DNA from: Macrostomum lignano | Taxonomy: Eukaryota | Reading direction: 5' to 3' | Assembly: GCA_002269645.1 (NCBI GenBank) | Contig: NIVC01001733.1 | Span: forward strand, 180,345 to 244,344 | DNA: 64,000 bases | Shown: positions 11,171-64,000 of the stretch, in pieces | Position numbering within the stretch: the first letter of the stretch is position 1 | Layout: each line of letters starts with the position of its first letter | The notes under the pieces: generated by a model | Told to the model about the DNA's origin: nothing | Databases searched by the model: none | Seen by the model: only the letters and a program-made list of their open reading frames with translations | Made by a program: the position numbers and the translations under genes

Positions 11171-11206
11171 ATCAACTTAGAGCTTAGGAGAGGACATCGG
11201 GGGTCA

Positions 11207-12559
11207 TCAATCGGAGCGTTTCTTCCCGCAGCCACCGCCGCCGCCTGCGGCCGCCAGCCGCCGCACCCGCAGGCTGTAGCGCAGGACGATGCCGCAGGCG
11301 CAGGCGGCCACCAGGCCGGCGCTGACCAGCATGGGCAGCCAGGGAGGCGGCGAGGTCAGCAACGGCCGACGATCCCGAAGGTCGAAGCGCAGCGCGGCGA
11401 TCTGGTCGGCGGTGCCCATGCAGCCGGCCAGGTGGAACAGCTGGTGCGAGTGCCCGACGATGTCGAATGCGCCGGGCCAGAGGCGCTCCGGCAGGTGCGT
11501 CAGGTAGAGGAAGGCCATCGCCAGCACCAGCCACAGCTGGCGGCGCCAGTGCGGCAGCGACGCCTCGTCGGAGTTGGCGGCCGCAGCGGCCAGGCGGGCG
11601 AGCACCGGCAGGTTGGCGATGAGGCAGGCGAGCACGAAACCCGACAGGCGAAGCACCTGCCGGCTCAGGGATCTGGGGGGATATTTTTGGGATTATATCT
11701 TGTAAAGTGTTGGCTATTCGGTACAGGTGGGATCTCGGTTCTTACGGATGGGATCTCGGTTCTTTGGGATGGGATCTCGATTCTTACGGATGGGATCTCC
11801 GTTCTTAGGGATGGGATATCGGTTGTTACGGATGGGATATTGATTCTTACGGACGGGATCTCAACTCTTTTTGATGGGATCTTGATTCTTTTTGATGGTA
11901 TCTTGATTCTTTTTGATGGGATCTTGATTCTTTTTGATGGGATCTTGATTCTTACGGATTGGAGGTTGGTGATTACAGGTGGGAGTTTGATATCTAAGAG
12001 CTGAATTTGATGTCGGAGCTCTCAAATTCGGAGCGCACCTGGGCATGAACCTGGTCCGACAGGAGGTCCAGACTCCCCAGATGGCGGTGGCGGTGGAGGC
12101 GGCCAGAAGCAGCAGCTGAGACGCGGGCGCCATCATGTGGCCGGGCAGAGAGTAGGCCGAATAGGCGCAGGTGGCGCAGTGCCCGTAGAAGGCGATGGCC
12201 GCGTAATCAATGAAGAAGCAAACGTCCCGGGCCTCCCTGGACAGCACGTTGAACATGTGCGCCAGCGCGGAGGCCAGCGGGTACAGCACCGAGGCGAGCA
12301 GGAAGAGGTACAGCGGCCAGACGGCCGGGTCCGAGACGCCGAACTCGCTGACGGCGCCGACGGCCATGGACAGGAAGGCCAGCGAGCCCAGCAGGTGGCT
12401 CCAGACATTGAGGGTCTCGTTATTCCAGCTGAAGATGCTGCGGACGCACTGCGCCACCGAGCTGACTGGCCGGTAGCCCGATAGGATGAAGACCTCCTTG
12501 AAGTGGCCCGGCACCTCGTGGTGGCGCAGGACGGCTGGCTTCAAGTAGGCGGCCTGCAT
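11207..12559 (-). CDS. PAQR: Progestin and adipoQ receptor family protein (membrane progestin receptor-like)
   Basis: Exons 12559-12039 and 11672-11207 with a phase-2 junction. Motifs: [49 protein letters not shown]. Confidence 0.92.
11735..11965 (+). repeat. 21-bp minisatellite in the PAQR intron (gatgggatctcgattcttacg)
   Basis: Direct reading. Confidence 0.85.
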
Positions 12560-15104
12560 TGACGCGGGCTGCGGGCAAGTCGTAGGTTGTGGCCGTGGCA
12601 CGCGAGTTTAAATTGGTGGGCAAATAATTATTCAGCTGCAATAAACACAATGCCCATATGGGATAAAATGTTTCATGCTTTTTCCGAACAAGCTGCCCAT
12701 TTTAAAGAAGTAAAATATTTTTTTCAAAACTGATTAAACAATATGTTAATCCATTGCACATAGATAGAATTGTAGCAATTAGTAACAACAAATTAGTTGC
12801 TTATAAAAGCTACATGATTAAATAAAGTAGAAATCCTAACCAGATAAATTATTCCTAAAATAAACTGAAAAATTGTAGCAGCTACATCAACTGAAACATC
12901 TCAAAATTGCATAGCTCTGAGGAATCAGAGTCTAAATCTAAAAGCTGAATTCTACAAGTGTAAAAGCTAAAATGTGCATGTGTTTTAATAAATAAGACTT
13001 AAAGCAAAACATAATTTTTGATAGCTGAATATTTGCTTAGCTATGAAGGCGCTGGCTTTCCTATTAGTCATCAGGGTAAACTAAATTTTATCATTTTTTA
13101 CTTATACGCGCGTAAAAAGTTACTTTAATTCTTCTTTGAACATTCTGGTGGCCTTGCAGCACAAAAAATACACATTGACAGAAAATCCAATAAAAATCCC
13201 ATTTCTTGTCACCATCATAGATAAAGAGATCACTATTTATGTCGTTTGAATATGATAATAAAATGTTTCAAGAAAAATTACAGCTTTATATTTTCTATAA
13301 CAGCTTTGTTTTATTCGATATAAACACAGTCAATGTCAGAGTTGCAATCAAGGCATTATATTTCTAATTTGATTTGTGTATAATAATCACAAGGACTACT
13401 TAAGTTATGAAAGTTATAACTTTAGAGCCTTGAGTAGGAGTTGCTCTCAGAATAATCAGCTGAGAAAGTGAAACTAAAAAATAAAGCTTTCTTGATAACA
13501 ATTTTATCTTTAGTTTAGATCAAAATTATGTAAAAATGAAAACTTATTGATTATAAGCACTTGCTAAAGCTTTTTTATTTTGCATAATTATTGGTGTAAT
13601 AGTTATTGATTTGTTTAAACTAATAAAAAACCGAGGAAAAAGAAAATAAAAAGAATCCGGCGCTTTACATTAAAAAATTAAGTATGTACAAAAAGGAAAA
13701 GGAAATTAATCAGCTTAAGAAACTTACTTCTGCTTTAACTTTTCTGAAAAACTAGCTTATCTTTCTAAAAAAATCAAAACACGGAAGTTGTCTTTCTGAC
13801 TACTAGTGTCTTTGATAGGAAACAAGCCCATAAAAAATTGTATGTCGGGTCATGTTTTTTTTACGAATTTTTAATTTAAATATGTACGCAATTCTAGATT
13901 ATTTAAAGAAAAACATTTCTACTTAGCACTGCATTGCATTAAAAGTAAATTCTTACCTAATAAATTTTTCAGCGTTTGAAACACTTGGGCATTGATAGCC
14001 ACTTTTGACAGCTTGACAGCAAAATGCTACTGTATAGCCGAAACGATTCCAAATTGTCAATTCATTTAAATAATTTCAAATTGTCAATCAATTGTTACGA
14101 TAAAAAGCTCTTTTACGAGCGCCAGAGAAATGTTTTACAAAGACTAAACAGTTGATTATGGATGAAAATGGGCACATTTTATTGAAAATAAGTTAACATT
14201 CTGTATAATTAACATCAAAGCGCATTGGGCAAAGTGACATTTGCAGTATTGCTGTAACTAGGACATGAGACGCGCCTGGTAGTGGTAATTGTTAGTGCAT
14301 ACATGACAATGTACATGTACATCAAAGCATTAGTTAGTCAGCTGATGTTTATTAATATTTTTAAACAGTCACGGTATTTTAACGAGGCCAACAAAGTTCA
14401 AAATAGCCACGGAATGGTGCACTATCCATTTGATTACGGAATAATAAGCTGAGCTATTTTTCAGCAACAACGAATTGCGAAAGCTGGAATCAATTTTTTT
14501 CTGCAACCGAGTGCTGAAGGGAAAGCAGAGCAGAGCAGCAGACATTTCGTAAGTATGAAGAATTATTAATACAAATAAATACACTGAGTAACTGAAGATA
14601 ATATTTTTAGATAATCTACAAACAAAAAGATCCCGAATGCGTACTAACCTACTTACAGTAGTGTGCAAAGAAATTTGCAAATATATTGGCAAAAATGAAT
14701 AAAAACTATAAGCAAACACAGGAGTGGCATTAATAGTTTTCATCCAACTATCATGTCTGATTGCAAGAGAAAATTCAAACCGACTGATTGGTGCGGCCGG
14801 CCTGGGCTCGAGAAATAAGCATTGAGCATTCATCCAAGTATTTTAACTGATTGATTGAGTAGAGAGAATTACAAAAAATGACTCGAATAATTTCTGTTGC
14901 TTTCGACTGAGACTCGGGCAGCCTGCCTTGTTGCATCGAGGGCTGGCTTCAAGCGCCAGGAGTTGCCGTTAGGATAGCATGCGGCAGGTGAGTCACTTCA
15001 GGTGCTTTCACTGACGCATTGCCTGAAGTTATATTTTCAGGAGGCTCCAAATTATTGAATGGGAATTGGACTTAAGGGATGCACAGACCTGACAACTAAG
15101 GCCT

Positions 15105-15331: not shown

Positions 15332-18300
15332 TCACTTGACCTGCAGCAGGGTGCGGCACCGGCCCTGCAGCCGGCTGATCTTGTCGAACACCTTGACCGC
15401 AGGCCCCAGCTTCAGGCCCAAGCCCGTCAGGACGTCCATCCGCTTCATCAGCATCAGCGAGGCGCCGTCGATCTCCTGCTCAACGCAGGCCTGCGCAGCC
15501 AGCGGGAAGCCTTCGCCGTCCAGCCAGCTGCGGACCTGCGCGATGCTCCACAGGCTGGCGTCGCCCGCCAGCTGCGCCTGCGACTCCTGCGGCGGTGGCT
15601 GCTGACCGGAGCTGAGGAATCATAATTGGTGAGGATTATGGATCATTGTAGCCTGAAGTTGAAAACCCATAAATCACGGATCCCAAAGCCATAAATCAGG
15701 GACCCCAAGAGCCATAAATCAGGGACCCCAAGAGCCATAAATCAGGGATCCCAAGAGCCATAAATCAGGGATCCCGAAAGCCCATAAATCAGGGATCCCA
15801 AAAGCCCATAAATCAGGGATCCCAAGAGCCATAAATCTAGGATTCCGAAGCCCATAAATCAGGAATCTCATAAACCATAAATCAGGGATCCCAAAAGCCC
15901 ATAAATCAGGGATCCCAAGAGCCATAAATCTGGGATTCCGAAGCCCATAAATCAGGAATCTCATAAACCATAAATCAGGGATCCCGAAAGCCATAAATCA
16001 GGGATCCCGAAAGCCATAAATCAGGGATTCCAAAAGCCCATAAATCAAGGATTCCAAAAGCCATAAATCAGGGATTCCGAAGCCCATAAATCAGGAATCT
16101 CATAAACCATAAATCAGGGATCCCGAAAGCCATAAATCAGGGATTCCAAAAGCCATAAATCATGGATCCCAAAAGCCATAAATCAGGGATTCCGAAGCCC
16201 ATAAATCAGGGATTCCGAAGCCCATAAATCAGGAATCTCAAACCATAAATCCGGGATCCCGAAAGCCATAAATCAGGGACTCCAAAAGCCATAAATCTGT
16301 AATTCCAAAAGCCATAAATCAGGGATTCCAAAAGCCATAAGCCATAAATAAAAACATAAAGGATCCCATAGAACCAACAGACCCGTCCACTCGCTCCTCC
16401 TCCCGGCAGCGGCTGCACACCCACTTGGCGTCGCTGGCTGGTCGCTCGGTGACGCGGGGCCGGTGGCAGCTGACGTGGTAGCCTTTGTCGCAGGCGTCGC
16501 AGATCAGGATGAGCTCGGGGTCGCCGCTGCCTGAGCACACGCAGCAGGTCTTGCACTCGGAGCACTGCCACGGCGACTGGCAGGCCCTGGCGGCCAGCTC
16601 CGGCCCATACAGCATGCAGCTGGGGTGCGCCTGGGGCGGGCGGGTGCTGCGTGGCAGGGCTGATCCCAATCGCCATGGCTCTGATCCCACTCATAGCGGC
16701 TCTAATCCCACTCATAGCGGCTCTGATCCCACTCATAGCGGCTCTGATCTCACTCATAGCGGCTCTGATCCCAATCCCCACGGCTCTGATCCCAATCCCC
16801 ACGGCTCTGATCCAAATCACCATGGCTCTGATCCCACTCATAACGGCTCTGATCTCACTCATAACGGCTCTGATCCCAATCGCCACGGCTCTGATCCCAA
16901 TCCCCACGGCTCTGATCCCAATCCCCACGGCTCTGATCCCAATCCCCACGGCTCTGATCCCAATCACCATGGCTCTGATTCCAATCACCATGGCTCTGAT
17001 TCCAATCCCCACGGCTCTGATCCCAATCCCCACGGCTCTGATCCCGATCCCCACGGCTCTGATCCCAATCCCCACGGCTCTGATCCCAATCCCCACGGCT
17101 CTGATCCCAATCCCCACGGCTGATCTCAACTTGGGGCCACGGCTCTGATCCCAATCGCCACGGCTATCACAAGTCAACCCAACTCGACAAAGCGGCCCGC
17201 GATTCGACATCCTAACTCGTCTTTTCAACATCCGCATTAAAGATCCCATTACTATTCACTCCTTGTCCCAGTCTCCATCCCCGACTATATTCCCACCCAT
17301 CAAAATTTAAATCCCACATCCCATCCCACACTGAATCCCATCCCCCAAATCCCATTCAGTGCCGATCCCAACCCCACCTTGTGCGCGCAGTCCCGGCAGC
17401 GCAGCATCCGCTCGGGGACGCCCATGCGATTCGCACTTGGAGGCGACTGGCAGAAGTCGCACAGGTCCGGTGAATTCGCCGAGACGCCGCCGCCGCCGCC
17501 GCCGCCACCGCTGGCCGAGGCGGCCGCGTCCATGGAGGATGAGGAGGCGGAGGGGGCGCGAGAGGCCACCACCGGCGACTTCTTCCGACGGCGGCGTCGA
17601 CGCGGAGCGCCGCACAGCCGCAGGTCCAGCGGCGTCGAGCCGGCACCCGCTGCTCGCTTGACGGCCGGCGGCCCGACAAATTCGTCGCCGTCGCCGTCAT
17701 CGCCGTTGTCGTTGTCAGCATCGTCAACGACTGCAGCGGCCACGGCGGCCACGGCGGCAGCGGCGGCGGCTCGGCGCCGTTTGGCGAGCTGCACCCGCTC
17801 CTTGCGGCGGCGCAGGGCCGCCTGGCGCCGCGAGCCGTCCAAGTCGAGCTGGAAGCGGCTGGGCCCGAGACGGAACAGCCGGCCGGCGGCGGCCTCCCGC
17901 TCCAGCGCCTCGGACAGGGCGGTGGTCGACATTGGGGGGACTTCGGCATGCTGGCGGAATGCAGATGGGACGAAATGCGAGATAGAGAAAAAAGTGGACG
18001 GCCAAGGTGTGCGGGAAAAAGCGAAAGGGCGGGGACAATATGGAGGGAGAGGGAGATGGGGAGAAGAGGGAGAGGGAGATGGGGAGAAGAGGGAGAGGGA
18101 GATGGGGAGAAGAGGGAGAGGGAGATGGGGAGAAGAGGGAGAGGGAGATGGGGAGAAGAGGGAGAGGGAGATGGGGAGAAGAGGGAGAGGGAGATGGGGA
18201 GAAGAGGGAGAGGGAGATGGGAGAAGAGGGAGAGGGAGATGGGGAGAAGAGGGAGAGGGAGATGGGAGAAGAGGGAGAGGGAGATGGGAGAAGAGGGAGA

Positions 18301-19643
18301 GGGAGATAGGGAAAAGAGGGAGAGCGAGATAGGGAGAAGAGGGAGAGGGAGATAGGGAGAAGAGGGAGAGGGGAATAGAGAGAAGAGGGAGAGGGAGATA
18401 GGGAGAAGAGGGAGAGGGAGATGGGGAGAAGAGGGAGAGGGGAATAGGGAGAAGATGGAGAGGGAGATAGGGAGAAGAGGGAAGGGGATAAGGAGAAGAG
18501 GGAGAGGGAGATAGGGAGAAGAGGGAGAGGGAGATAGGGAGAAGAGGGAAGGGGATAAGGAGAGGGAGAGGGGAGAGGAAGAAGGGCAGCGGGGAGATTG
18601 GGATGAGAGGAAGAGAGGGGGAGGGAGTTAATGAGGTCTATCAGCCAAACTCTCTCCCTATTAATCCCTATTGGAATAATTTGAAAAAGCCGCGGACGCG
18701 CCACACAGGCCACAAAATATGGCGCCCCAAAAGCGCGATGCAAACACCGAAGATTACGGTTATTATTACGGTTACATAGTAGCCATAATGCAACACCTCA
18801 GCCCGCGCGTTTTCTTAATTTTCCAGAGTCGCGACACTGGAAAATTCCTTACTTCGTTCAATGGAAAACATCGCAGCTAAGGACTGTTGCAGAGACCGGC
18901 ATGACAATGGGGATGTGCAGGGATTAAGCCTGCAGAGACCGGCATGACAATGGGGATGTGCAGGGATTAAGCCTGCAGAGATCGGCATGACAATGGGGAT
19001 GTGCAGGGATTAAGTCTGCAGAGACCGGCATGACAATGGGGATGTGCAGGGATTAAGCCTGCAGAGACCGGCATGACAATGGGGATGTGCAGGGATTAAG
19101 TCTGCAGAGACCGGCATGACAATGGGATGTGCAGGGATTAAGCCTGCAGAGACCGGCATGACAATGGGGATGTGCAGGGATTAAGCCTGCAGAGACCGGC
19201 ATGACAATGTGGATGTGCAGGGATTAAGCCTGCAGAGACCGGCATGACAATGGGGATGTGCAGGGATTAAGCCCCATAAGTCAATCAGCGGCACCGCACC
19301 TGCTGCAGCAGCAGCATCCGAGCGTGCAGAATCTGGACGGTGAAGGTGGCACCGTCCGGGAGGCTCTTGGCCGCGGCGAGCACCCGCTGGGTGGTGTCCG
19401 GGCTGTTCCGGTCGCTGGCCAGCTCCTTCCGGCGGTGCCAGCTGGAGGCGTTTCGGTAGGACACGGAGCCCTTGTACTCCACCCGCATCACCTGGCGCTG
19501 TTCGACAAGGCGCTGCAGGATGCTGGCCACGGCATCCCGGGTGAGCTCGGCGCCTCCGGGATTCTGCTGCCGCTGACGGTTGGCCTGGTGAAGCGGGGCG
19601 GCGGTTCGAACTGCGAATTGAGCGCTTCGGGGTTGAAATGATT
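15332..19643 (-). CDS. SAMD1: Chromatin protein: SAMD1/KAT6-type winged helix + second WH + double PHD finger + SAMD1(atherin)-type SAM
   Basis: Exons: 19643-19300 (LQRLVEQRQVMRVEYKGSVSYRNA); 17950-17378 (ALEREAAAGRLFRLGPSRFQL; LCDFCQ..PERMLRCRDCAHK); 16630-16383 (AHPSC..WQCSECKTCCVC..LICDACDKGYHVSCH..WVCSRC); 15611-15332 (WSIAQVRSWL..EQEIDGASLMLMKRMDVLTGLGLKLGPAVK). Phases are compatible. A candidate first exon at 20844-20793 is uncertain. The symbol reflects SAM/WH similarity only. Confidence 0.85.
15670..16345 (+). repeat. ~23-bp minisatellite (ccataaatcagggatcccaaaag), intronic
   Basis: Direct reading. Confidence 0.92.
16660..17165 (+). repeat. 21-bp minisatellite (ggctctgatcccaatccccac), intronic
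   Basis: Direct reading. Confidence 0.92.
18040..18625 (+). repeat. GA-rich repeat (gggagaagagggagagggagat), intronic
   Basis: Direct reading. Confidence 0.92.
18888..19275 (+). repeat. 43-bp minisatellite (gcagagaccggcatgacaatggggatgtgcagggattaagcct), about 9 copies
   Basis: Direct reading. Confidence 0.92.
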
Positions 19644-19869
19644 CTGGGAAATAATCTATAGGGAAAGAGTTGCCACTAGCAATGATGAGTCAGCTTCCAC
19701 TTTATGGCAGCGAATTCGGATTGGGTGACTCTTGGCCATAGACAGTTGGTTGACTGCCTACGCAGCTCGTTTCCTTCGGACTATGAGGCTCGCACCAACC
19801 TCTGCTCCTGCGAGCGTTCTAGCGAACATCAGGCGCCGAAAATGAATTTCAAGTGATTGACAGAGAAAA

Positions 19870-20765
19870 CAAGTTTCCGATGAGTATCCATCCGATTGAG
19901 AAACGAATTTCCGATGAGTATCCGATTGAGAAAATGAGTTTCCCATGAGTGTCCGACTGAGAAAATGAGTTTCTGGTGAGTGTCCGACTGAGAAAACGAG
20001 TTTCCGATGAGTATCCGACTGAGAAAATGAGTTTCCGATGAGTATCCGACTGAGAAAACGAGTTTCCGATGAGTATCCGACTGAGAAACGAGTTTCCGAT
20101 GAGTATCCGACTGAGAAAACGAGTTTCCGATGAGTATCCGACTGAGAAAACGAGTTTCCGATGAGTATCCGACTGAGAAAACGAGTTTCGATGAGTATCC
20201 GACTGAGAAAACGAGTTTCCGATGAGTATCCGACTGAGAAAATGAGTTTCCCATGAGTGTCCGACTGAGAAAATGAGTTTCCCATGAGTGTCTGAGAAAA
20301 TGAGTTTCCGATGAGTATCCGACTGAGAAAATGAGTTTCTGGTGAGTGTCCGACTGAGAAAATGAGTTTCTGGTGAGTGTCCGACTGAGAAAATGAGTTT
20401 CCCATGAGTGTCCGACTGATAAAATGAGTTTCCCATGAGTGTCCCACTGAGAAAATGAGTTTCCCATGAGTGTCCGACTGAGAAAACGAGTTTCCGATGA
20501 GTATCCGACTGAGAAAATGAGTTTCCCATGAGTGTCCGACTGAGAAAATGAGTTTCCCATGAGTGTATGAGAAAATGAGTTTCCGATGAGTATCCGACTG
20601 AGAAAATGAGTTTCTGGTGAGTGTCCGACTGAGAAAATGAGTTTCTGGTGAGTGTCCGACTGAGAAAATGAGTTTCCCATGAGTGTCCGACTGATAAAAT
20701 GAGTTTCCCATGAGTGTCCCACTGAGAAAATGAGTTTCCCATGAGTGTCCGACTGAAAAAATGAC
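19870..20765 (+). repeat. ~31-bp minisatellite (tttccgatgagtatccgactgagaaaatgag)
   Basis: Direct reading; source of three overlapping spurious ORFs. Confidence 0.92.
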
Positions 20766-21035
20766 TCAACTGAGTTTCTCATGCGATCATACGAATCGGA
20801 CAGGGTGTCCGCCTGCTGCTGCGCGGCTCTGATTGCTCCGGCATGGCCAAATAAAAGGCAAAGGAAGATGGACTCTCGTGTCTTTGTTTTTGAGAGGCGC
20901 GAAAGAAGAGCAAATTGCGGCCTTTTCTCTAAACTTTCTTGCCTCTTAAACAAGCTCGATTTTCACTTAGCAAGCAACCAGGGCCGCTATTTAAGCTATT
21001 TTACTTCCAGTTCTAAAGGCAAAAGCCGCTCCGGT

Positions 21036-24190: not shown

Positions 24191-25136
24191 AATGGCGTGC
24201 CCAAGCCTGCGCTAAGGTCACTGCAGTTTTTGTGTACATATGCCAGTGCGCGCATATTTAACAAACTTGCCAAAAAACGCTCTTTCTTTTGCAGCTCTCG
24301 CCATAGCGAGTTTCAAGTGCGAAGCCAGTGTGGGAAACCCTAAAAAACTAGGGAAAGTGGGGGTTGTGACTCACATATCACAATCACAAAATATGCGTGA
24401 GAAAGTGAGACAATCACAAAATACGCTGTCAGGTTAGGTCTTATACGAGTAAACCATGAGCAGTGCCCACAGGGCGGGCCTCCTGGCTAGGGCGCGAACG
24501 TAGGCACTAGCCAGCTAGCCGTCAACGAAATGCCGAGTGCCTGTCCTCACCGGTAGGGTGCCGGCAGCTTCAGCAGCAGTACCTCTTGCACCGGCTGTGG
24601 GCAGTGCGATTCTGTACAGATAATACGTACGGCCTGCCAGCTGGAGTCGCAACAGGTCGCTTGAACAGACCAGGCGATAGAGCACCGCGTACATATTAAG
24701 GGCATTAAACCTTAAGAGTTTCTCAATGCATGCTCGAATCAGCTGTTTCAGCAAAGCCCTAAAGAGAGCCCTAAACGCATACATTTTGATGCGTCAGTAT
24801 CCATCCACTCCAGAAAAAATCCTGAGCGTCACGAACCCCATTGCCAATACGCACTTTTAATTGCATTGACTGCCACGTGACCGCAGGTAAGTCTAAGTCT
24901 CAACTTCAGTAGTTGAGCCTTTTTCGAATTTTTGCGTTATCATTGCCAGCAAAGATTTGCGTCATGGCAACTGGCGGCAGCGGCGCACTTCTGCCTTATC
25001 TGAAGGCTACAAAGCAAAATTCAATTGATAAGCGGAGTTACACTTAAAGGGTTCAGGAAACCATTTCTCTGTTTCGCTCTCGCTTTTTTGCACCTGACAT
25101 TTCAAATCTGTAGAAGACAGCAAGGACCAGCAAGGC

Positions 25137-33557
<8,421 letters not shown>

Positions 33558-34129
33558 GCTCCGCGAGAGCGCAACAACGAAATCTTAGTTGAACTCCCAT
33601 TGATTTCTAATGGTTTGATACAATTAACTCTTATTCAATACTGCGATCCTACTTTCGAGCTAGTAGTATGGATCGTTTTTTGTTGAAAACTTCATCCATG
33701 ACTATTGAATTCTCTCCTGGTTCTAACTACGCTCGTAGCATTGCTAGAAGCCGAAGAATGAATGTCACCATGTTTTTATACTTTTTATTAAGTTAAAAAT
33801 AAATTGGATCAGCGAATTCCAAGACTAAAATAGTAGGGAAAATATCGGAAATCTGAAATCGAAGAACTGAATCATTTTTCACGGGTAAAATCTATGAATT
33901 GAACATTTCTAAGAAAGATGACACTTTTAACAAAGTTGAGTAAGTGTAGATAAAATACATGCATATATGGTAGCTAATATGTTTCAGAGTTTAATCAAAC
34001 CAGTGATTAAAATATAACGCAAAACTAATCCGCAAAAACTAAGGCCTGGACGCGCTGCAGATGAATATAAACAGGACGAAATTGAGTAAAACTTTTTATT
34101 GTCCAATCGTCTCAAAAATCCGCCCAACG

Positions 34130-38955: not shown

Positions 38956-39300
<345 letters not shown>

Positions 39301-55215: not shown

Positions 55216-58200
55216 TCCTATATACTAAAAATGAGTTGTCTGTGGGTATGCGATAGATTTCAGAAAAAATGGCTCAACCGATTTTCTTCAAACTTGCACC
55301 ATTCGATCAGAAATTCTCCTGGGACGGTACATGCATCTTGGCTAAGAAATTGCTATATATTAAAGGGATTAAATATTCGAAAAACATGCTTTTTTGCAAA
55401 GGTCAAGCAAAATTTTCGACTTGAAATGCATTGTAAGAATGCTAGAGAAAAAACTGACTGGCTGAATTTCAATTCTGATAAAGATTGCATCACAACAAGT
55501 AGAAAACAGTGCCGAAGAAATGCACACACGACTTGATTTAAATTGCGTAACCAATATTGCTAACTTGAATTGAAACTGATACTGGCTGACTGAGAAATTG
55601 ATTTTGTCATAACTTTTTACTCTAATTGACTTGCTGTAAGAATTGAATTATAAGGGCCACAATTGATGTACTCCAATTGAAAAGAGATAGCCCAGATGCG
55701 AACAGACTGGAATGCTAATGTAGCGACCTGGGTTCGAATCTTAGTAGTGCAAAATAATTTTTTTATTAAAACACCTTGAAAACATGAAACTGCTAAACAT
55801 AAAAGAAGCACAATGTCAAACATATCAGTGGCACCATGTCGAACATTAAAGAGCCACCATGCCAAACATAAACGAGCCACCATGTCAAGCATTAAAAAGC
55901 CACCATGTCAAACATATTTGTGACTCCATGTAAAACATATATACGTGACTCCATGTCAAACATAAAAGAGCCACCATGTCAAACGTAAAAGAACCGACAT
56001 GTTGAACATTAAAGAGCCACCATGTCAAACGTAAAAGAACCACCATGTCGAACTTTAAAGAGCCACCATGTCAAACGTAAAAGAACCGACATGTCGAACA
56101 TTAAAGAGCCACCATGTCAAACATTAAAGAGCCACCATGTCAAAAATTAAAGAGCCACTTTGTCATACTTAAAAGAGCCACCATGTCAAACATTAAAGAG
56201 CTACCATGTCAAACATAAAAAAGCCACCATGTCAAACTTTAAAGAGCCACCACGTCGAACGTGAAAAAGCCACCATGTCAAGCATAAAAGAGCCACCATG
56301 TCTAACAATAAAGAACCACTTTTTCGAACATTAAACAGCCACCATGTCAAATGTAAAAGAACCGACATGTCGAACATTAAAGAGCCACGATGTCAAACAT
56401 TAAAGAGCCACCATGTCAAAAATTAAAGAGCCACTTTGTCATACTTAAAAGAGCCACCATGTCGAACATTAAAGAGCTACCATGTCAAACATAAAAAAGC
56501 CACCATGTCAAACTTTAAAGAGCCACCACTTCGAACGTGAAAAAGCCACCATGTCAAACATAAAAGAGCCACCATGTCTAACAATAAAGAACCACCATGT
56601 CGAACATTAAAGAGCTACCATGTCAAGCATAAAAGAGCCGACATGTCGAAAATTAAAGAGCTACCATGTCAAACATTAACGAGCCACCATGTCAAACATT
56701 AAAGAGCCACTTTGTCGAAAATTAAAGAGCTACCATGTCAAACATAAAAGAGCCAACATGTCGAAAATTAAAGAGCCACCATGTCAAACGTAAAAGAACC
56801 ACCATGTCGAACATTTAAGAGCTACAATGTCAAACATTTAAGAGCCACCATGTCAAACGTAAAAGAACCACCATGTCGAACATTTAAGAGCTACAATGTC
56901 AAACATTAAAGAGCCACCATGTCAAACATTAAAGAGCCACCATGTCAAACATAAAGGAGCCACTTTTTCGAACATTAAAGAGCCACCACGTTGAACATTA
57001 AAGAGCCACCATGTCGAACATTAAAGAACCACCATGTCAAACATTAAAGAGCCACCATGTCAAATAATAAAGAGCCACCATGTCAAACATTTAAGAGCCA
57101 CCATGAAAAAAATTTAAAGAGCCACCATGTCTAACATTAAAGAGCCACCATGTCCAACATGCAACATTAAAGAGCCACCATGTCCAACATATATGTGACT
57201 CCATGTCGAACATTAAAGAGCCACCATGTCGAACGTTAAAGAGCCACCATGTCGAACATAAAAGAGCCACCATGTAAAACATTAAAGAGCCACCATGTCT
57301 AACATTAAAGAGCCACCATGTCGAACGTTAAAGAGCCACCATGTCAAACATTAACGAGTCACCATGTCAAGCGTATACGTGACTCCATGTCAAACATTAA
57401 AGAGCCATCATTTCAGACATTAAAGTGTCACCATGTCGAACATTAAAAAGCCACCATGTCCAACATTAAAGAGCCACCATGTCTAACATATATGTGACTC
57501 CAAGTCGAACATTAAAGAGCCACCATGTCCAACATGCAACATTAAAGAGCCACCATGTCCAACATATATGTGACTCCATGTCGAACATTAAAGAGCCACC
57601 ATGTCGAACGTTAAAGAGCCACCATGTCGAACATAAAGAGCCACCATGTAAAACATTAAAGAGCCACCATGTCTAACATTAAAGAGCCACCATGTCGAAC
57701 GTTAAAGAGCCACCATGTCAAACATTAACGAGTCACCATGTCAAGCGTATACGTGACTCCATGTCAAACATTAAAGAGCCATCATTTCAGACATTAAAGT
57801 GTCACCATGTTGAACGTTAAAGAGCCACCATGTCGAACATTAAAGAGCCACCATGTAAAGCATATATGTGACTCCATGCCAAATATATACATGACTCCAT
57901 GTCTAACACATACATGACTCCATGTCAAACATTAAAGAGCCACCCTGTCGAACGTTAAAGAGCCACAATGTAGAACATTAAAGAGCCACCATGTCGAACG
58001 TTAAAGAGCCACCATGTCGAACATTAAAGAGCCACTTTGTCAAACATAGAAGAGCCACCATGTCAAACATAGAAGAGCCACCATGTCAGACATTGGAAGC
58101 CACCGTATCAAACATAAAAGAGTTACCATGTTGAACAAAAAAGAGCCACAATGTAGAACATAAAAGAGCCACCCTGTTAAACATAAAATATACACAATTT

Positions 58201-58669
58201 CAAATGTAAAAGTAAGTGAATTTTAAAGGAGCCGCTATAATGCTAAAGAAATTGTCGCACTAGCTACTTATTGTCTGGTGGATGCTTGCTATTTGGGGAT
58301 GCTATCTATCTTGGGATGCTTGCTATCTGGGGGATGCTTGCTATCTGGGGATGCTTGCTATCTGGGGGATGCTTGCTATCTGGGGGATGCTTGCTATCTG
58401 GGGGATGCTTGCTATCTGGGGATGCTTGCTATCTGGGGGATGCTTGCTATCTGGGGATGCTTGCTATCTGGGGGATGCTTGCTATCTGGGGGATGCTTAC
58501 TATCTGGGGGATGCTTGCTGTCTTGCGATGATTTCTTTTTGCATTGCACTTCATTTGAGTATTTTGTCTGTTTTCTTTGTGAAGGCTTTATTTCGCTATT
58601 TTTTGTTACTTACTTGTAGAGAACAGAGACTCTATATAGATGTCCCCCAACGGGGGCAAAGATTGCTAG
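55216..58669 (+). mobile_element. Non-autonomous Helitron-like unit 1 with internal ~23-bp satellite
   Basis: 5' A/TCCTATATACTAAAAATGAG..; 3' hairpin ccccc-aac-ggggg then CTAG/T; internal array of aaagagccaccatgtcgaacatt (~55800-58190) and a 17-bp array (58270-58520). Confidence 0.75.
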
Positions 58670-61600
58670 TCCTATATACTAAAAATGAGTTGTCTGTATG
58701 TATGTATGTATATGGGTATGCGATTGATTTCAGAAAAAACGGCTCAACCGATTTTCTTCAAACTTGCATCATTCGATCAGAAATTTTCCTGGCACAGTAC
58801 ATGCATCTTGGCTAAGAAATTGCTCAATGTTAAAGGGATTAAATATTCGAAAAACACGCTTTTTTGCAAAGGTCAAGCAAAATTTTCGACTTGAAATGCA
58901 TTGTAAGAATGCTAGAGAAAAAACTGACTGACTGAATTTCAATTCTGATAAAGATTGCATCACAACAAGTTGAAAACAGTGCCGAAGAAATGCACACACG
59001 ACTTGATTGAAATTGCGTAACCATATTGCTAACTCGAAGTGAGACTGATACTGGCTGACTGAGAAATTGATTATGTCATAACTTTTTACTCCAATTGACT
59101 TGCTGTAAGAATTGAATTATAAGGGCCACAATTCATGTTCTCCAATTGAAAAGAGATAGCCCTGATGCGAACAGACTGGAATGCTAATGTAGCGACCTGG
59201 GTTCGAGTCTTAGAAGCGCAAAATAATTTTTTTATTAAAACACCTTAAAAACTAAAAACTGCTAAACATAAAAAAGCGCAATAGAAGAGCCACCATGTCA
59301 AACCTAAAGGAGCCACCATGTCGAACATTAAAGAACCACCATGTCGAACATAAAAGAGCCACCATATCGAACATAAAAGAGTTACCATGTTAAAAATTAA
59401 AGAGCCACCATGTCGAACATAGAAGAGCCACCATGTCGAACATAGAAGAGCCACCATGTCAAACATTAAAGAGCCACCATATCAAACATAAAAGAGTTAC
59501 CATGTCAAACATTAAAGAGCCACATTGTCAAGCATTAAAGACCCACCATTTCAAACCTAAAATAGTTACCATGTCAAACATTCAATAGCCACCATGTCAA
59601 ACATTAAAGAGCCACCATGTCGAACATAAAAGAGCCACCATATTAAACATAAAAGAGTTACCATGTCAAACATTAAAGAGCCACCATGTCGAACATTAAA
59701 GAGCCACCATGTCAAACATTAAAGAGCCACATTGTCAAGCATTAAAGACCCACCATTTCAAACCTAAAAGAGCCACCATGTCAAACATTAAAGAGCCACC
59801 ATGTCGAACATTAAAGAGCCACCTTGTCAAATATTAAAGAGCCACCATTTCAAACCTAAAGAAGCCACCATGTCGAACATACAAGAGCCACCATGTCGAA
59901 CATAGAAAAGCCACCATGTCAAACATTAAAGTCACCATGTCAAACATTAAAGAGCCACCGTTTCAAACCTAAAAGAGCCACCATGTTAAAAATTAAAGAG
60001 CCACCATGTCAAACATAAAACAGACACCATTAAGAACATTAAAGAGCCACCATGTCAAATATTAAAACAGCCACCATTTCGAAAATTAAGGAGCCACCAT
60101 TTCAAAAATTTAAGAGCCGCTATGTTAAACATTAAAGGGCCACCTTGTCAAATATTAAAGAGCCACCATTTCAAACTAAAAGAGCGACCCTGTCGAACAT
60201 ACAAGAGCCACCATGTCGAACATAAAAGAGCCACCATGTCGAACATACAAGAGCCACCATGTCGAACATAGAAAAGCCACCATGTCGAACATAGAAAAGC
60301 CACCATGTTAAACATTAAAGAGCCAATATTTCAAACCTAAAGGAGCCACCATGTCGAACATAAAAGAGTCACCATGTTAAAAATTAAAGAGCCACCATGT
60401 CGAACATTAAAGAGCCACCATTTCAAACATTAAAGAGCCACCATGTCAAACATTAAAGAGCCACCGGTTCAAACCTAAAAGAGCCACCATGTCGAACATT
60501 AAAGAGCCACCATGTCAAACATAAAACAGACACCATGTCAAACATTAAAGAGCCACCATGTCAAACATTAAAGAGCCACCATGTCAAACCTAAAAGAGCC
60601 ACCATGTCGAACATTAAAAAGCCACCATGTCAAACATTAAAGAGCCACATTGTCAAACATTAAAAAGCCACCATTTCAAACCTAAAAGAGCCACCATGTC
60701 AAACATTAAAGAGCCACCATGTCAAACATTAAAGAGCCACCTTGTCAAATATTAAAGAGCCATTTCAAACTAAAGAAGCCACCATGTCGAACATACAAGA
60801 GCCACCATGTCGAACATTAAAGAGCCACCATATCAAACATAAAAGAGTTACCATGTCAAACATTAAAGAGCCACCATGTCAAACATTAAAGAGCCACCAT
60901 GTCGAACATAAAAGAGCCACCATATCAAACATAAAGAGTTACCATGTCAAACATTAAAGAGCCACCATGTCGAACATTAAAGAGCCACCATGTCAAACAT
61001 TAAAGAGCCACCTTGTCAAATATTAAAGAGCCACCATGTCGAACATAAAAGAGCCACCATATCAAACATAAAAGAGTTACCATGTCAAACATTAAAGAGC
61101 CACATTGTCAAGCATTAAAGACCCACCATTTCAAACCTAAAATAGTTACCATGTCAAACATTCAATAGCCACCATGTCAAACATTAAAGAGCCACCATGT
61201 CGAACATAAAAGAGCCACCATATTAAACATAAAAGAGTTACCATGTCAAACATTAAAGAGCCACCATGTCGAACATTAAAGAGCCACCATGTCAAACATT
61301 AAAGAGCCACATTGTCAAGCATTAAAGACCACCATTTCAAACCTAAAGAGCCACCATGTCAAACATTAAAGAGCCACCATGTCGAACATTAAAGAGCCAC
61401 CTTGTCAAATATTAAAGAGCCACCATTTCAAACCTAAAGAAGCCACCATGTCAAACCTAAAAGAGCCACCATGTCAAAATTAAAGAGCCACCATGTCAAA
61501 CATTAAAGAGTCACCATGTAAAACATTAAAGAGCCACCATGTCAAATATAAAACAGCCACCATTTCGAAAATTAAAGAGCCACCATGTCAAAATAAGAGC

Positions 61601-64000
61601 CCATTTAAACATTAAAGGGCCACCATTGTCAAATATTAAAGAGCCACCATTTCAAACCTTAAAGAGCCACCTGTCAAATAAAGAGCCACCATGTTAAACA
61701 TAAAAGAGCCACCTGTCGAACATACAAGAGCCACCATGTCGAACATAGAAAGAGCCACCATGTCGAACATAGAAAAGCCACCATGTCGAAACATAAAAGA
61801 GCCAATATTTCAAACCTAAAGGAGCCACCATGTCGAACATAAAAGAGTCACCATGTTAAAAATTAAAGAGCCACCATGTCGAACATTAAAGAGCCACCAT
61901 TTCAAACATTAAAGAGCCACCATGTCAAACATTAAAGAGCCACCGGTTCAAACCTAAAAGAGCCACCATGTCGAACATTAAAGAGCCACCATGTCAAACA
62001 TAAACAGACACCATGTCAAACATTAAAGAGCCACCATGTCAAACATTAAAGAGCCACCGGTTCAAACCTAAAAGAGCCACCATGTCGAACATTAAAAAGC
62101 CACCATGTCAAACATTAAAGAGCCACATTGTCAAACATTAAAAAGCCACCATTTCAAACCTAAAAGAGCCACCATGTCAAACATTAAAGAGCCACCATGT
62201 CAAACATTAAAGAGCCACCTTGTCAAATATTAAAGAGCCACCATTTCAAACCTAAAGAAGCCACCATGTCGAACATACAAGAGCCACTATGTCGAACATT
62301 AAAGAGCCACCATATCAAACATAAAAGAGTTACCATGTCAAACATTAAAGAGCCACCATGTCAAACATTAAAGAGCCACCATGTCGAACATAAAAGAGCC
62401 ACCATATCAAACATAAAAGAGTTACCATGTCAAACATTAAAGAGCCACCATGTCGAACATTAAAGAGCCACCATGTCAAACATTAAAGAGCCACCTTGTC
62501 AAATATTAAAGAGCCACCATTTCAAACCTAAAAGAGCCACCATGTCGAACATTAAAGAGCCACCTTGTCAAATATTAAAGAGCACCATTTCAAACCTAAA
62601 GAAGCCACCATGTCGAACATACAAGAGCCACCATGTCGAACATAAAAGCCACCATATCAAACATAAAAGAGCCACCATGTCGAACATAAAAGAGCAACCA
62701 TGTCAAACATAAAACAGACACCATTAAGAACATTAAAGAGCCACCATGTCGAACATTAAAGAGCCACCATGTCAAATATAAAACAGCCACCATTTCGAAA
62801 ATTTAAGAGCCGCCATGTTAAACATTAAAGGGCCACCTTGTCAAATATTAAGAGCCCATTTCAAACCTAAAAGAGCGACCCTGTCGAACATACAAGAGCC
62901 ACAATGTCGAACATAAAGAGCAGCTATGTAGAACATAAAAGAGCCACCATGTCAAACATAAAAAAGCCACCATGTCAAACATAAAAGAGCCAACATGAAG
63001 AACATTAAAGAGCCACCATGTCGACCATTAAAAGAGCCACCATGTCGAACATACAAGAGCCACCATGTCGAACATAGAAAAGCCACCATGTCGAACATAG
63101 AAAAGCCACCATGTTAAACATTAAAGAGCCAATATTTCAAACCTTAAGGAGCACCATGTCGAACATAAAAGAGTCACCATGTTAAAATTAAAGAGCCACC
63201 ATGTCGAACATTAAAGAGCCACCATGTCGAACATTAAAGAGCCACCATGTCAAACATAAACAGACACCATGTCAAACATTAAAGAGCCACCGGTTCAAAC
63301 CTAAAAGAGCCACCATGTCGAACATTAAAGAGCCACCTTGTCAAATATTAAAGAGCCACCATTTCAAACCTAAAGGAGCCACCATGTCGAACATTAAAAA
63401 GCACCATGTCGAACATTAAAAAGCCAACATGTCAAACATAAAAGAGCCACCATGTCAAACCTAAAAAAGCCACCATGTCAAACATAGAAGAGCCACCATG
63501 TCAAACATAATAGAGCCACCATGTCAAACATTAAAGAGCCACCATGTCAAACATAGAAGAGCCACTATGTCAAACATAAAAGAGCCACCATGTCGAACAT
63601 AAAAGAGTCACCATGTTAAAAATTAAAGAGCCACCATGTCGAACATTAAAGAGCCACCATGTCGAACATTAAAAGCCACCATGTCGAACATTAAAGAGCC
63701 ACCATATCAAACATAAAAGAGTTACCATGTCAAACATTAAAGAGCCACATGTCGAACATTAAAGAGCACCATATCAAACATAAAACAGACACCATGTCAA
63801 ACATTAAAGAGCCACATGTCGAACATTAAAGAGCCACCATGTCAACATAAAACAGCCACCATTTCGAAAATTAAGGAGCCACCATTTCGAAATTAAAGAG
63901 CGCCATGTTAACCATTAAAGGCCACCATGTCAAACATTAAAGAGCCCCATGTCGAACATAAAAGAGCACCATGTCGAACATTAAAGAGCCACCATGTCAA
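58670..64000 (+). mobile_element. Helitron-like unit 2, head-to-tail with unit 1, running off the window
   Basis: Starts with TCCTATATACTAAAAATGAG immediately after the CTAG of unit 1; about 600 bp closely similar to 55216-55800; followed by more than 4.7 kb of the same satellite. Confidence 0.75.

What the first reader, a model, noticed from the sequence alone, without database searches (positions are those of the whole stretch)
15332..19643. Protein joining the KAT6 N-terminus (WH1-WH2-double PHD) to a SAMD1 SAM domain, with no MYST domain
Seen: an in-phase four-exon model giving RVEYKGSVSYRNA (SAMD1/KAT6 CpG-binding WH1), GRLFRLGPSRFQL (KAT6-like WH2), a tandem PHD, and a terminal SAM with EQEIDG.SL.LM.R.DVLTGL..KLGPA.K typical of SAMD1/atherin. 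Known: vertebrate SAMD1 is WH+SAM, and KAT6A/B is WH1+WH2+DPF+MYST. Inference: this may be an ancestral or intermediate architecture linking the two families, a polymerising CpG- and histone-reading factor without a catalytic domain. The first helix of WH1 could not be located.
Basis: partly seen in the sequence, partly recalled or inferred. Interest (0 to 1): 0.75.

Follow-up and report, generated by a model that had tools for sequence, protein, structure and literature searches.

The report
Flatworm SAMD1 ortholog retaining double PHD
This Macrostomum lignano (flatworm) gene encodes a non-catalytic chromatin reader, the invertebrate form of vertebrate SAMD1, which still carries the second winged helix and double PHD finger also found in KAT6 acetyltransferases; the family is widespread in animals but unstudied, and this copy has lost the DNA-reading helix.

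Summary
On the minus strand, four in-phase exons with canonical GT/AG sites encode the C-terminal half of a SAMD1-type winged helix (WH1), an H15-like second winged helix (WH2), a double PHD finger (DPF) and a SAMD1-type SAM domain. There is no MYST domain in the gene, the 64-kb window or the paralogous locus.

The window is M. lignano contig NIVC01001733.1. The annotated gene BOX15_Mlig000786g1 spans 20844-14998.

The architecture is not a local oddity. At least 92 protein clusters carry it, from corals to hemichordates, echinoderms, molluscs, annelids, flatworms and arthropods. Databases mostly call them "KAT6B-like", and a few "Atherin/SAMD1".

WH1 and SAM are SAMD1-type, not KAT6-type (WH1: E 1.4e-14 against SAMD1, 0.87 against KAT6A). 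Vertebrate SAMD1 nests inside this family. Its "small helical domain" is homologous to the family's WH2.

So this is best read as the ancestral, DPF-bearing form of SAMD1 and an ancient paralog of the KAT6 N-terminal module. It is not a KAT6 N-terminus fused to a SAM.

This copy has a ~170-bp deletion and a 1-nt frameshift in exon 1, while the paralog is intact.

Published work calls SAMD1 vertebrate-specific. Interest is moderate.

The parts
20782..20844 (-). Remnant of exon 1. The ATG is at 20844. A 1-nt deletion after codon 6 shifts the frame (MPEQSEPRSSRRTPCPIRMIA, then TGA). The normal frame (AAQQQADTLSDSYDR) has no ATG.
   Evidence: Alignment to the paralog exon 1; tblastn; identity to annotated gene start.
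20767..20783 (-). Deletion junction. About 170 bp present in the paralog (L001 10064-10232) are missing here. They comprise the rest of exon 1, which encodes HLDDWMATVLSVIDKLRDRKARPDVERIFVM (WH1 helix alpha1), the exon-1 donor, and the start of intron 1. The 31-bp minisatellite now abuts the coding remnant.
   Evidence: blastn collinearity, MAFFT alignment, and no alpha1-coding sequence anywhere in the window.
19859..20764 (.). Intron-1 minisatellite: 31-bp unit, ~29 copies.
   Evidence: Tandem Repeats Finder.
19300..19584 (-). Exon 2. It encodes WH1 alpha2-alpha3 and the beta-hairpin (ANRQ...RVEYKGSVSYRNA, 19584-19441) and the start of WH2 (from 19407).
   Evidence: Splice sites; Pfam SAMD1_WH profile positions 32-63 only; P0001/P0002 models.
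17378..17950 (-). Exon 3. It encodes the rest of WH2 (to 17840, ...EALEREAAAGRLFRLGPSRFQLD), a low-complexity basic/Ala-rich linker, and most of PHD1 (from 17467).
   Evidence: AlphaFold gives a helix-helix-helix-hairpin topology at paralog residues 114-182. hhalign matches to KAT6 WH2 and the SAMD1 small helical domain.
16383..16630 (-). Exon 4. It encodes the end of PHD1 and all of PHD2. The DPF as a whole spans 17467-16403 across intron 3.
   Evidence: PDB KAT6A DPF 5.5e-24; Foldseek MOZ DPF E 6e-9, TM 0.68-0.74; zinc ligands checked so far conserved.
15332..15611 (-). Exon 5. It encodes a short linker and the SAM domain (15559-15365), with the TGA stop at 15334-15332. A GTGAGT donor at 15335-15330 overlaps the stop.
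   Evidence: PDB SAMD1 SAM 1e-12; Foldseek TM 0.87 at 48% identity.
14998..15022 (-). Optional last mini-exon used in the annotated models (adds QCVSEST and a stop). It adds no domain.
   Evidence: tblastn; annotated gene end at 14998.
15662..19273 (.). Introns 2-4, each dominated by its own minisatellite: a 43-bp unit at 18888-19273, a 23-bp unit at 18043-18615, a 21-bp unit at 16660-17165 and a 23-bp unit at 15662-16340.
   Evidence: The same arrays occur at the same intron positions in the paralog with different copy numbers.

Best explanation
The locus is one of two near-identical M. lignano copies of a metazoan gene family that is the invertebrate counterpart of vertebrate SAMD1 (atherin). 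It encodes a non-enzymatic, multivalent chromatin reader and scaffold.

Shown here:
- The domain order is WH1 (SAMD1-type) - WH2 (linker-histone/H15-like) - DPF - SAM (SAMD1-type).
- There is no MYST domain.
- The architecture is conserved from corals to deuterostome invertebrates.
- Vertebrate SAMD1 nests inside the family. It has lost the DPF and keeps WH2 only as its 'small helical domain'.
- KAT6 proteins share the collinear WH1-WH2-DPF module but form a separate WH1 clade. The two families are therefore ancient paralogs whose split predates the cnidarian-bilaterian split.

Inferred for the intact protein (the paralog P0002):
- WH1 inserts the end of helix alpha1 (R-x-RKAR) into a CpG major groove and the Y-K wing into the adjacent minor groove, as in human SAMD1.
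- WH2 adds sequence-independent DNA or nucleosome binding.
- The DPF binds the H3 N-terminal tail, probably with an acyl-K14 pocket.
- The SAM oligomerises, giving avidity and recruiting SAM partners such as L3MBTL-type proteins.

The window copy itself is 5'-damaged. A 1-nt frameshift and a ~170-bp deletion remove alpha1 and the exon-1 donor. It is either a decaying duplicate that could at most yield a WH1-defective DPF-SAM protein, or it carries an assembly error next to a minisatellite.
For: Exon chain and phases.

Domain identities:
- Pfam, window model and family.
- PDB sequence matches.
- AlphaFold model with pLDDT >90 in WH1, 80-93 in the DPF and 83-96 in the SAM.
- Foldseek: SAMD1 WH TM 0.81 at 46% identity, SAMD1 SAM TM 0.87 at 48% identity, MOZ DPF at 40% identity.

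No MYST:
- tblastn of the KAT6A MYST core finds nothing in the window or in L001.
- The next gene downstream is a HlyIII/PAQR gene 2.4 kb away.
- None of the 178 best family members has a MYST domain.

Family breadth:
- 484 proteins at E<=1e-30.
- Domain architectures tallied.
- Taxa named.
- Several orthologs sit as one uninterrupted ORF on 1.6-2.1-kb contigs, consistent with mRNAs.

SAMD1 nested in the family: NJ trees.

WH2 bridging: hhalign gives 94.2% to the SAMD1 linker, 94.5% to KAT6 WH2, and 60.6% between those two. Pfam Linker_histone and SAMD1_SHD hits occur in orthologs.

DNA-contact residues: the equivalents of R43, R45, K46, R48, Y87, K88, S92 and R94 of human SAMD1 are 85-99% conserved in 92 family members and all present in the paralog.

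5' damage. dN/dS between the two copies is 0.125 over 459 codons.
Against: - No M. lignano transcript data could be consulted. The exon chain rests on splice logic, the deposited annotation and orthologs.
- The domain trees are NJ on 63-108 columns with weak support: 66% for the KAT6 versus family split on WH1, and 47% for the DPF split.
- The M. lignano WH2 has no Pfam hit of its own and only moderate pLDDT (62-86).
- No biochemical function of any family member is known.
- Many flatworms have little or no CpG methylation, so a 'CpG-island' logic may not transfer.
- Amphioxus, tunicates, cyclostomes, sponges and ctenophores were not checked, so the timing of the DPF loss and the origin of the family are approximate.
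- The deletion and frameshift could be PacBio assembly artefacts. The G-run indel is typical of such errors, and the deletion abuts a tandem array.
Confidence: 0.8

Rival explanations
1. It is a truncated or mis-delimited KAT6 (MOZ/MORF/Enok) gene whose MYST exons lie elsewhere or are skipped in this model.
For: Databases name most orthologs 'histone acetyltransferase KAT6B-like'. The DPF's single best PDB match is KAT6A. The WH1-WH2-DPF order is that of KAT6.
Against: - The SAM exon ends in a stop, or at most 7 further codons.
- A HlyIII/PAQR gene follows 2.4 kb downstream in both copies.
- No MYST-like sequence occurs in the 64 kb or in the paralog locus.
- None of the 178 relatives has a MYST domain.
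- WH1 is SAMD1-type: 1.4e-14 against SAMD1, 0.87 against KAT6A.
- True KAT6 N-termini from a slug and from Nematostella form a separate WH1 clade.
Confidence: 0.03
2. The architecture is a gene-model fusion: the SAM exon belongs to a neighbouring SAMD1-like gene, and WH-DPF is a separate gene.
For: Intron 4 is repeat-filled. No M. lignano transcripts were examined here.
Against: - The phase-2 junction closes exactly (GG|C) with canonical sites.
- The same WH1...SAM chain occurs in at least 92 clusters across at least 8 phyla.
- Many of these are single uninterrupted ORFs on ~2-kb contigs.
- There is no separate start codon or WH domain ahead of the SAM exon.
Confidence: 0.03
3. The window copy is fully functional and the 5' lesions are assembly errors: a homopolymer indel and a collapsed region beside the 31-bp minisatellite. 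On this reading the locus encodes the same intact 518-aa reader as the paralog.
For: - The frameshift is a loss of one G in a GG run.
- The deletion abuts a tandem array.
- The remaining 459 codons differ from the paralog by 11 synonymous and 4 non-synonymous changes, dN/dS 0.125, with no stop or frameshift.
- The deposited 5' junction is non-canonical (TG..AG), as if a paralog transcript had been forced onto this locus.
Against: - The deposited contig and the window agree base for base, though that is the same assembly.
- The deletion endpoints lie in repeat-like sequence, which is equally expected for a real slippage or unequal-exchange deletion.
- The low dN/dS could simply reflect the youth of the duplicate (dS 0.03).
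Confidence: 0.35
4. The family arose by recent domain shuffling, a KAT6 N-terminus captured by a SAM exon, in one invertebrate lineage, rather than being the ancestral form of SAMD1.
For: The domain order matches KAT6.
Against: - The architecture is present in Cnidaria, Ambulacraria, Lophotrochozoa and Ecdysozoa.
- Its WH1 and SAM group with SAMD1 and not with KAT6.
- Its DPF is not nested in KAT6.
- Vertebrate SAMD1 keeps a WH2 relic.
Confidence: 0.05

Closest known systems
Vertebrate SAMD1 (atherin), a CpG-island-binding repressor (Stielow et al. 2021, PMC8115922)
   Same: - N-terminal SAMD1-type winged helix: PF21524 2e-17 in the paralog, 46% identity and TM 0.81 to PDB 6LUI.
- All eight DNA-contact residues are conserved.
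- C-terminal SAM is 48% identical to the SAMD1 SAM (TM 0.87).
- The middle 'small helical domain' is homologous to this family's WH2 (hhalign 94%).
- Vertebrate SAMD1 nests within the family in WH1+SAM trees.
   Different: - This family carries a complete double PHD finger and a full WH2 between WH1 and SAM. Vertebrate SAMD1 has a disordered (in mammals Pro/Ala-rich) region there.
- The literature describes SAMD1 as vertebrate-specific.
- The window copy additionally lacks WH1 helix alpha1.
KAT6A/KAT6B (MOZ/MORF) and Drosophila Enok N-terminal module (Weber et al. 2022, PMC9881136; Becht et al. 2023, PMC9908889)
   Same: - Collinear WH1 - WH2 (H15-like) - DPF.
- The DPF is 38-41% identical to MOZ/MORF DPFs (E 5.5e-24).
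- WH2 profile match of 94.5%.
   Different: - No MYST acetyltransferase domain and no long C-terminal region. The protein ends in a SAM.
- WH1 is only ~26% identical to KAT6A WH1 (E 0.87) and sits in a different clade.
BAF45/d4 family DPF readers (DPF2, DPF3, PHF10)
   Same: DPF-type tandem PHD of nearly equal similarity: DPF2 1.9e-22, DPF3 5e-21, PHF10 1.3e-18. The residue at position 210 is Asp, as in DPF3.
   Different: No Requiem/C2H2 or SAY N-terminal region. Winged helices and a SAM flank the DPF instead. Nothing suggests BAF-complex membership.
Polymerising SAM chromatin proteins (Polyhomeotic/PHC, Scm, L3MBTL3)
   Same: A C-terminal SAM of the polymerising, chromatin-associated class. 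Structural matches have TM 0.78-0.84.
   Different: Sequence identity is only 22-31%, against 48% for SAMD1. There are no MBT or FCS domains.

Membership tests
SAMD1 (atherin) family | N-terminal SAMD1-like winged helix (Pfam PF21524 / IPR048589) | tested here: met
   Paralog P0002: 2e-17 over profile positions 2-63. PDB 6LUI E 1.4e-14. Foldseek TM 0.81. The window copy matches only profile positions 32-63, at 1.1e-6.
SAMD1 (atherin) family | Helix alpha1 with the CpG-contacting R45/K46 (and R43, R48) present in this very locus | tested here: not met
   The coding sequence for alpha1 is deleted from the window copy. It is present and conserved in the paralog and in 92 family members.
SAMD1 (atherin) family | C-terminal SAMD1-type SAM domain | tested here: met
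   PDB atherin SAM 1e-12, against Polyhomeotic 2e-5. Foldseek TM 0.87 at 48% identity.
SAMD1 (atherin) family | Central small helical domain (Pfam PF24971 SAMD1_SHD) | tested here: met
   hhalign of the family's WH1-DPF linker against the vertebrate SAMD1 linker: 94.2%, E 1.2e-7, 69 columns. Sub-threshold PF24971 hits occur in orthologs at 5e-4 to 8e-4. The M. lignano sequence alone has no Pfam hit.
SAMD1 (atherin) family | Architecture limited to WH + disordered region + SAM, as published for vertebrates | tested here: not met
   A full DPF lies between WH2 and SAM. This is why it is filed as a variant, or ancestral form, of the family.
SAMD1 (atherin) family | Binding to unmethylated CpG DNA, SAM homo-oligomerisation and L3MBTL3 interaction | not testable with these tools
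   Only residue conservation could be assessed.
KAT6 / MYST acetyltransferases | MYST (MOZ_SAS, PF01853) catalytic domain | tested here: not met
   No match in the window or the paralog locus. Pfam scans found no MOZ_SAS domain in the window model, the 15 aligned family members or six long relatives, and a phmmer screen with the KAT6A MYST core found none in the 178 relatives.
KAT6 / MYST acetyltransferases | N-terminal WH1-WH2(H15)-DPF module | tested here: met
   Same order and spacing. Family HMMs hit KAT6 WH1 (48-52 bits), WH2 (weakly) and DPF (110-120 bits) collinearly. WH2 hhalign gives 94.5%. WH1 is nevertheless in a separate clade.
BAF45/d4 (DPF1-3, PHF10) | DPF preceded by a Requiem/C2H2 or SAY region | tested here: not met
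   The DPF is present, but no such N-terminal domains appear in the Pfam scans.

The most novel reading that the evidence does not exclude
The last common ancestor of cnidarians and bilaterians had two paralogous genes built on one WH1-WH2-DPF chromatin-reading module. One was coupled to a MYST acetyltransferase (KAT6), the other to a polymerising SAM (proto-SAMD1). On this reading SAMD1 is not vertebrate-specific. Vertebrates merely lost the histone-reading DPF and degraded WH2 into the 'small helical domain'. Invertebrate SAMD1 would then couple CpG-DNA reading directly to H3-tail (acyl-K14) reading, a combination not described for any SAM-polymerising repressor.
Probability: 0.6. Interest if true: 0.6.

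Novelty: new variant of a known kind. Interest (0 to 1): 0.5.

Why it matters
SAMD1 and KAT6A/B are studied as separate CpG-island regulators, a repressor and an activator, that happen to share a winged helix. The SAMD1 literature calls the protein vertebrate-specific.

This family shows three things. SAMD1 has orthologs across animals. Those orthologs keep the whole KAT6-type reading module. The enigmatic central helical domain of SAMD1 is a relic of WH2.

That gives a concrete evolutionary model for both families. It also suggests experiments:
- Does the DPF restrict or redirect SAMD1-type repression?
- What replaced the DPF in vertebrates?
- What does a CpG-reading winged helix do in animals with little CpG methylation?

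It also flags a systematic mis-annotation ('KAT6B-like histone acetyltransferase') of a non-enzymatic protein in many genomes. M. lignano supports RNAi and transgenesis, so function is testable there.

Tried and rejected
- Search for the missing WH1 helix. tblastn of the paralog's exon-1 peptide and of a Lingula WH1 N-terminus against the whole window gave only chance-level hits (E 0.02-0.3), and these also occur in the neighbour region of the paralog. Alignment then showed the deletion.
- Search for MYST. tblastn with the KAT6A MYST core found nothing in the window or L001. The query was recalled from memory. The recalled KAT6A N-terminal region used as the query proved 100% identical to a database protein; the MYST core itself was not checked.
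- PDB sequence search with an ortholog's WH2 found nothing. Pfam on the M. lignano WH2 alone found nothing. Homology had to be shown by profile-profile comparison.
- The word-indexed protein searches returned few hits and no KAT6 or SAMD1 breadth. The exhaustive profile search was needed. Its top 150 were saturated by the family itself, so KAT6 sequences came from a separate search that returned mostly vertebrate fragments.
- No ML tree software was available, so only NJ with bootstrap was run. DPF branching order is unresolved.
- Literature searches for any description of an invertebrate WH-DPF-SAM protein or a SAMD1 ortholog found none.


Full report
**1. What is in the sequence**

The finding lies on the minus strand.

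The blocks join in phase through canonical sites:
- ...LLLQQ|HAEVPP..., phase 0
- ...CAHK|AHPSC..., phase 0
- ...RVDG|SGQQ..., phase 2 (GG|C)

The model ends at a TGA at 15334-15332.

Pfam finds PHD (1.6e-14), SAMD1_WH (1.1e-6, but only profile positions 32-63) and a sub-threshold SAM_1 match (E 0.008). Against PDB sequences, the tandem PHD is closest to the KAT6A DPF (5.5e-24). DPF2, KAT6B, DPF3 and PHF10 follow closely. The SAM is closest to the atherin/SAMD1 SAM (1e-12).

**2. Where it comes from and the true gene limits**

The protein is 97-99% identical to two Macrostomum lignano proteins, P0001 and P0002.

The window is identical to GCA_002269645.1 contig NIVC01001733.1. The deposited gene BOX15_Mlig000786g1 spans window 20844-14998.

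They also splice from a GTGAGT donor overlapping the stop codon to a 25-nt mini-exon (15022-14998) that only adds QCVSEST.

Downstream, 2.4 kb away, lies a HlyIII/PAQR gene. Upstream lies a Fumble/pantothenate-kinase gene. The same order holds at the second locus, L001 (NIVC01003246.1), which is collinear with the window over 29.5 kb.

**3. The missing helix is a deletion**

In L001, exon 1 is one block encoding MPEQSEAAQQQADTLSDSSDR-HLDDWMATVLSVIDKLRDRKARPDVERIFVM.

The window copy has the same ATG but differs in two ways:
- It lacks one G after codon 6, which shifts the frame.
- It lacks about 170 bp, comprising the alpha1-coding part, the donor site and the first ~75 nt of the intron. The 31-bp minisatellite now abuts the coding remnant.

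No alpha1-coding sequence exists elsewhere in the window.

Human SAMD1 reads CpG through R45/K46, with R43 and R48, at the end of alpha1. It reads the minor groove through Y87/K88, with S92 and R94. The paralog has all eight residues. The window copy retains only the wing set.

The remaining 459 codons differ from the paralog by 11 synonymous and 4 non-synonymous changes (dS 0.03, dN/dS 0.125). The lesion is therefore either recent or an assembly error: a G-run indel and a deletion beside a tandem array in a long-read assembly. The deposited 5' junction of P0001 is non-canonical (TG..AG), which makes that part of the annotation doubtful. I put about 0.6 on the damage being real.

**4. No MYST domain**

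- tblastn with the KAT6A MYST core finds nothing in the 64 kb or in L001.
- The gene is bounded by a neighbour 2.4 kb downstream.
- None of the 178 best relatives has a MYST domain. This includes six proteins of 1,180-2,163 aa, which are expanded versions with a DUF3504 insert.

**5. The family**

A profile of 15 members searched against 1.84 billion representatives gave 484 proteins at E<=1e-30.

Architectures among the 178 sequences in hand:

| Architecture | Count |
|---|---|
| WH1-WH2-DPF-SAM | 74 |
| WH1-DPF-SAM (divergent WH2) | 17 |
| DPF-less, WH1(-WH2)-SAM | 42 |
| Fragments and other | rest |

Thirty-nine of the 42 DPF-less proteins form one clade. All seven members of it that I looked up are vertebrate SAMD1/atherin, from shark, chimaera, lungfish and teleosts. 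The other three are scattered among DPF-bearing invertebrate sequences and are probably partial gene models.

The DPF-bearing form occurs in many groups:
- stony corals
- hemichordates, a crinoid and a sea star
- a brachiopod, bivalves, gastropods, an annelid and a nemertean
- free-living and parasitic flatworms
- horseshoe crabs, a spider, mites and a sea spider
- a springtail, krill, a damselfly, a cricket, hemipterans, a beetle and ants

Most are auto-named 'KAT6A/B-like histone acetyltransferase'. A few are named 'Atherin' or 'SAMD1'.

Several orthologs are single uninterrupted ORFs on 1.6-2.1-kb contigs. This is what mRNA assemblies look like, and it supports the WH1-to-SAM chain as one transcript in those species.

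**6. Which known family it belongs with**

*WH1.* The paralog's domain matches PDB SAMD1 at 1.4e-14 and KAT6A at 0.87. In the AlphaFold model (pLDDT >90 in WH1), Foldseek gives SAMD1 WH TM 0.81 at 46% identity, against KAT6A WH1 TM 0.75 at 26% identity.

*SAM.* SAMD1 gives TM 0.87 at 48% identity. Scm, PHC3 and L3MBTL3 give 22-31% identity.

*DPF.* MOZ and MORF give 38-41% identity, and DPF2/3 give 37-38%.

*Trees.* In NJ trees, KAT6 WH1 domains (human, fish, a sea slug, Nematostella) split from family + SAMD1 with 66% bootstrap. SAMD1 nests among the family for both WH1 and SAM. The family's DPFs separate from KAT6 + DPF2/3 + PHF10 with only 47% support, so that order is unresolved.

*WH2.* Orthologs hit Pfam Linker_histone (down to 1.6e-5) and, below threshold, SAMD1_SHD. 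Profile-profile comparison gives these results:

| Comparison | Probability | E-value |
|---|---|---|
| family WH2 vs vertebrate SAMD1 central region | 94.2% | 1.2e-7 |
| family WH2 vs KAT6 WH2 | 94.5% | 7.6e-8 |
| SAMD1 central region vs KAT6 WH2 | 60.6% | 8.3e-5 |

The family is thus a true intermediate sequence. SAMD1's 'small helical domain' is a relic WH2.

**7. How it most likely works**

*Shown here:* domain identities and order, conservation of the SAMD1 DNA-contact residues (85-99% in 92 members), conservation of the DPF zinc ligands checked (the ten of PHD1 and the first pair of PHD2), and conservation of the residues aligned to KAT6A S/D210, F211, L242 and W257. The role of those four residues in the H3K14-acyl pocket is recalled from the MOZ and DPF3b structural literature. 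It was not tested here.

*Inferred:*
- The intact protein binds CpG-containing DNA through WH1.
- It gains non-specific DNA or nucleosome affinity through WH2, as MORF WH2 does at the dyad (PMC9908889).
- It reads the H3 tail through the DPF.
- It multimerises through the SAM, as SAMD1 does (pentamer/polymer and L3MBTL3 binding; PMC8115922, PMC11969672).
- It is non-catalytic.
- The window copy, lacking alpha1 and a valid start, cannot do the first of these.

**8. Comparison with the literature and novelty**

Stielow et al. state that 'SAMD1 is a vertebrate-specific protein'. Later work traces it only from fish to mammals. The KAT6 winged-helix papers compare WH1 with SAMD1 but do not mention a WH-DPF-SAM protein. 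Six full-text searches found no description of it.

The sequences themselves are public and in part auto-labelled Atherin/SAMD1. The novelty is therefore interpretive. The family is a DPF-bearing, pan-metazoan form of SAMD1 and an ancient paralog of the KAT6 reading module. I file it as a new variant of a known kind, of moderate interest.

The 'KAT6 N-terminus + SAMD1 SAM' wording is not.

Noticed in passing
window 15662-20764: Every intron of this gene is dominated by its own minisatellite, with units of 23, 21, 23, 43 and 31 bp. The same arrays sit at the same intron positions in the paralog but with very different copy numbers. For example, the 21-bp array is 0.5 kb here and ~1.75 kb in L001, and the 23-bp array is 0.68 kb here and ~2.8 kb in L001.
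   Followed up: partly
window 55795-64000: An 8.2-kb satellite with a 23-bp unit (AAACATTAAAGAGCCACCATGTC, ~357 copies, 73% matches) runs to the end of the window.
   Followed up: no
window 29375-30016 and 38956-39288: Very pure trinucleotide arrays: (TAC)~214 and (AGT)~111, both at 98% matches. The first lies inside the span of the Fumble/pantothenate-kinase gene.
   Followed up: no
window ~11200-12600 (minus) and ~25100-33600 (plus): Neighbouring genes are a HlyIII/PAQR-type membrane protein downstream and a Fumble (pantothenate kinase) gene upstream. The paralogous contig keeps the same order over 29.5 kb at 85-98% nucleotide identity.
   Followed up: partly
window 20782/19584 junction (deposited model P0001): The deposited gene model joins the frameshifted exon-1 remnant to exon 2 through a non-canonical TG..AG intron. 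This suggests that a transcript of the intact paralog was forced onto this locus during annotation.
   Followed up: partly
relatives P0070, P0077, P0081, P0109, P0022, P0033: One tapeworm and one liver-fluke relative are expanded (926 aa, and at least 772 aa in a partial model), and four unnamed relatives that group with the tapeworm in the tree reach 1,180-2,163 aa; long inserts separate WH1 from the DPF, and a DUF3504 domain is present in P0081, P0109 and the fluke protein P0022.
   Followed up: partly
cluster of P0040: The 90% cluster of the sea-star ortholog lists 45-aa Streptomyces 'trp operon leader peptides' as members. This looks like a clustering artefact in the protein collection.
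   Followed up: no
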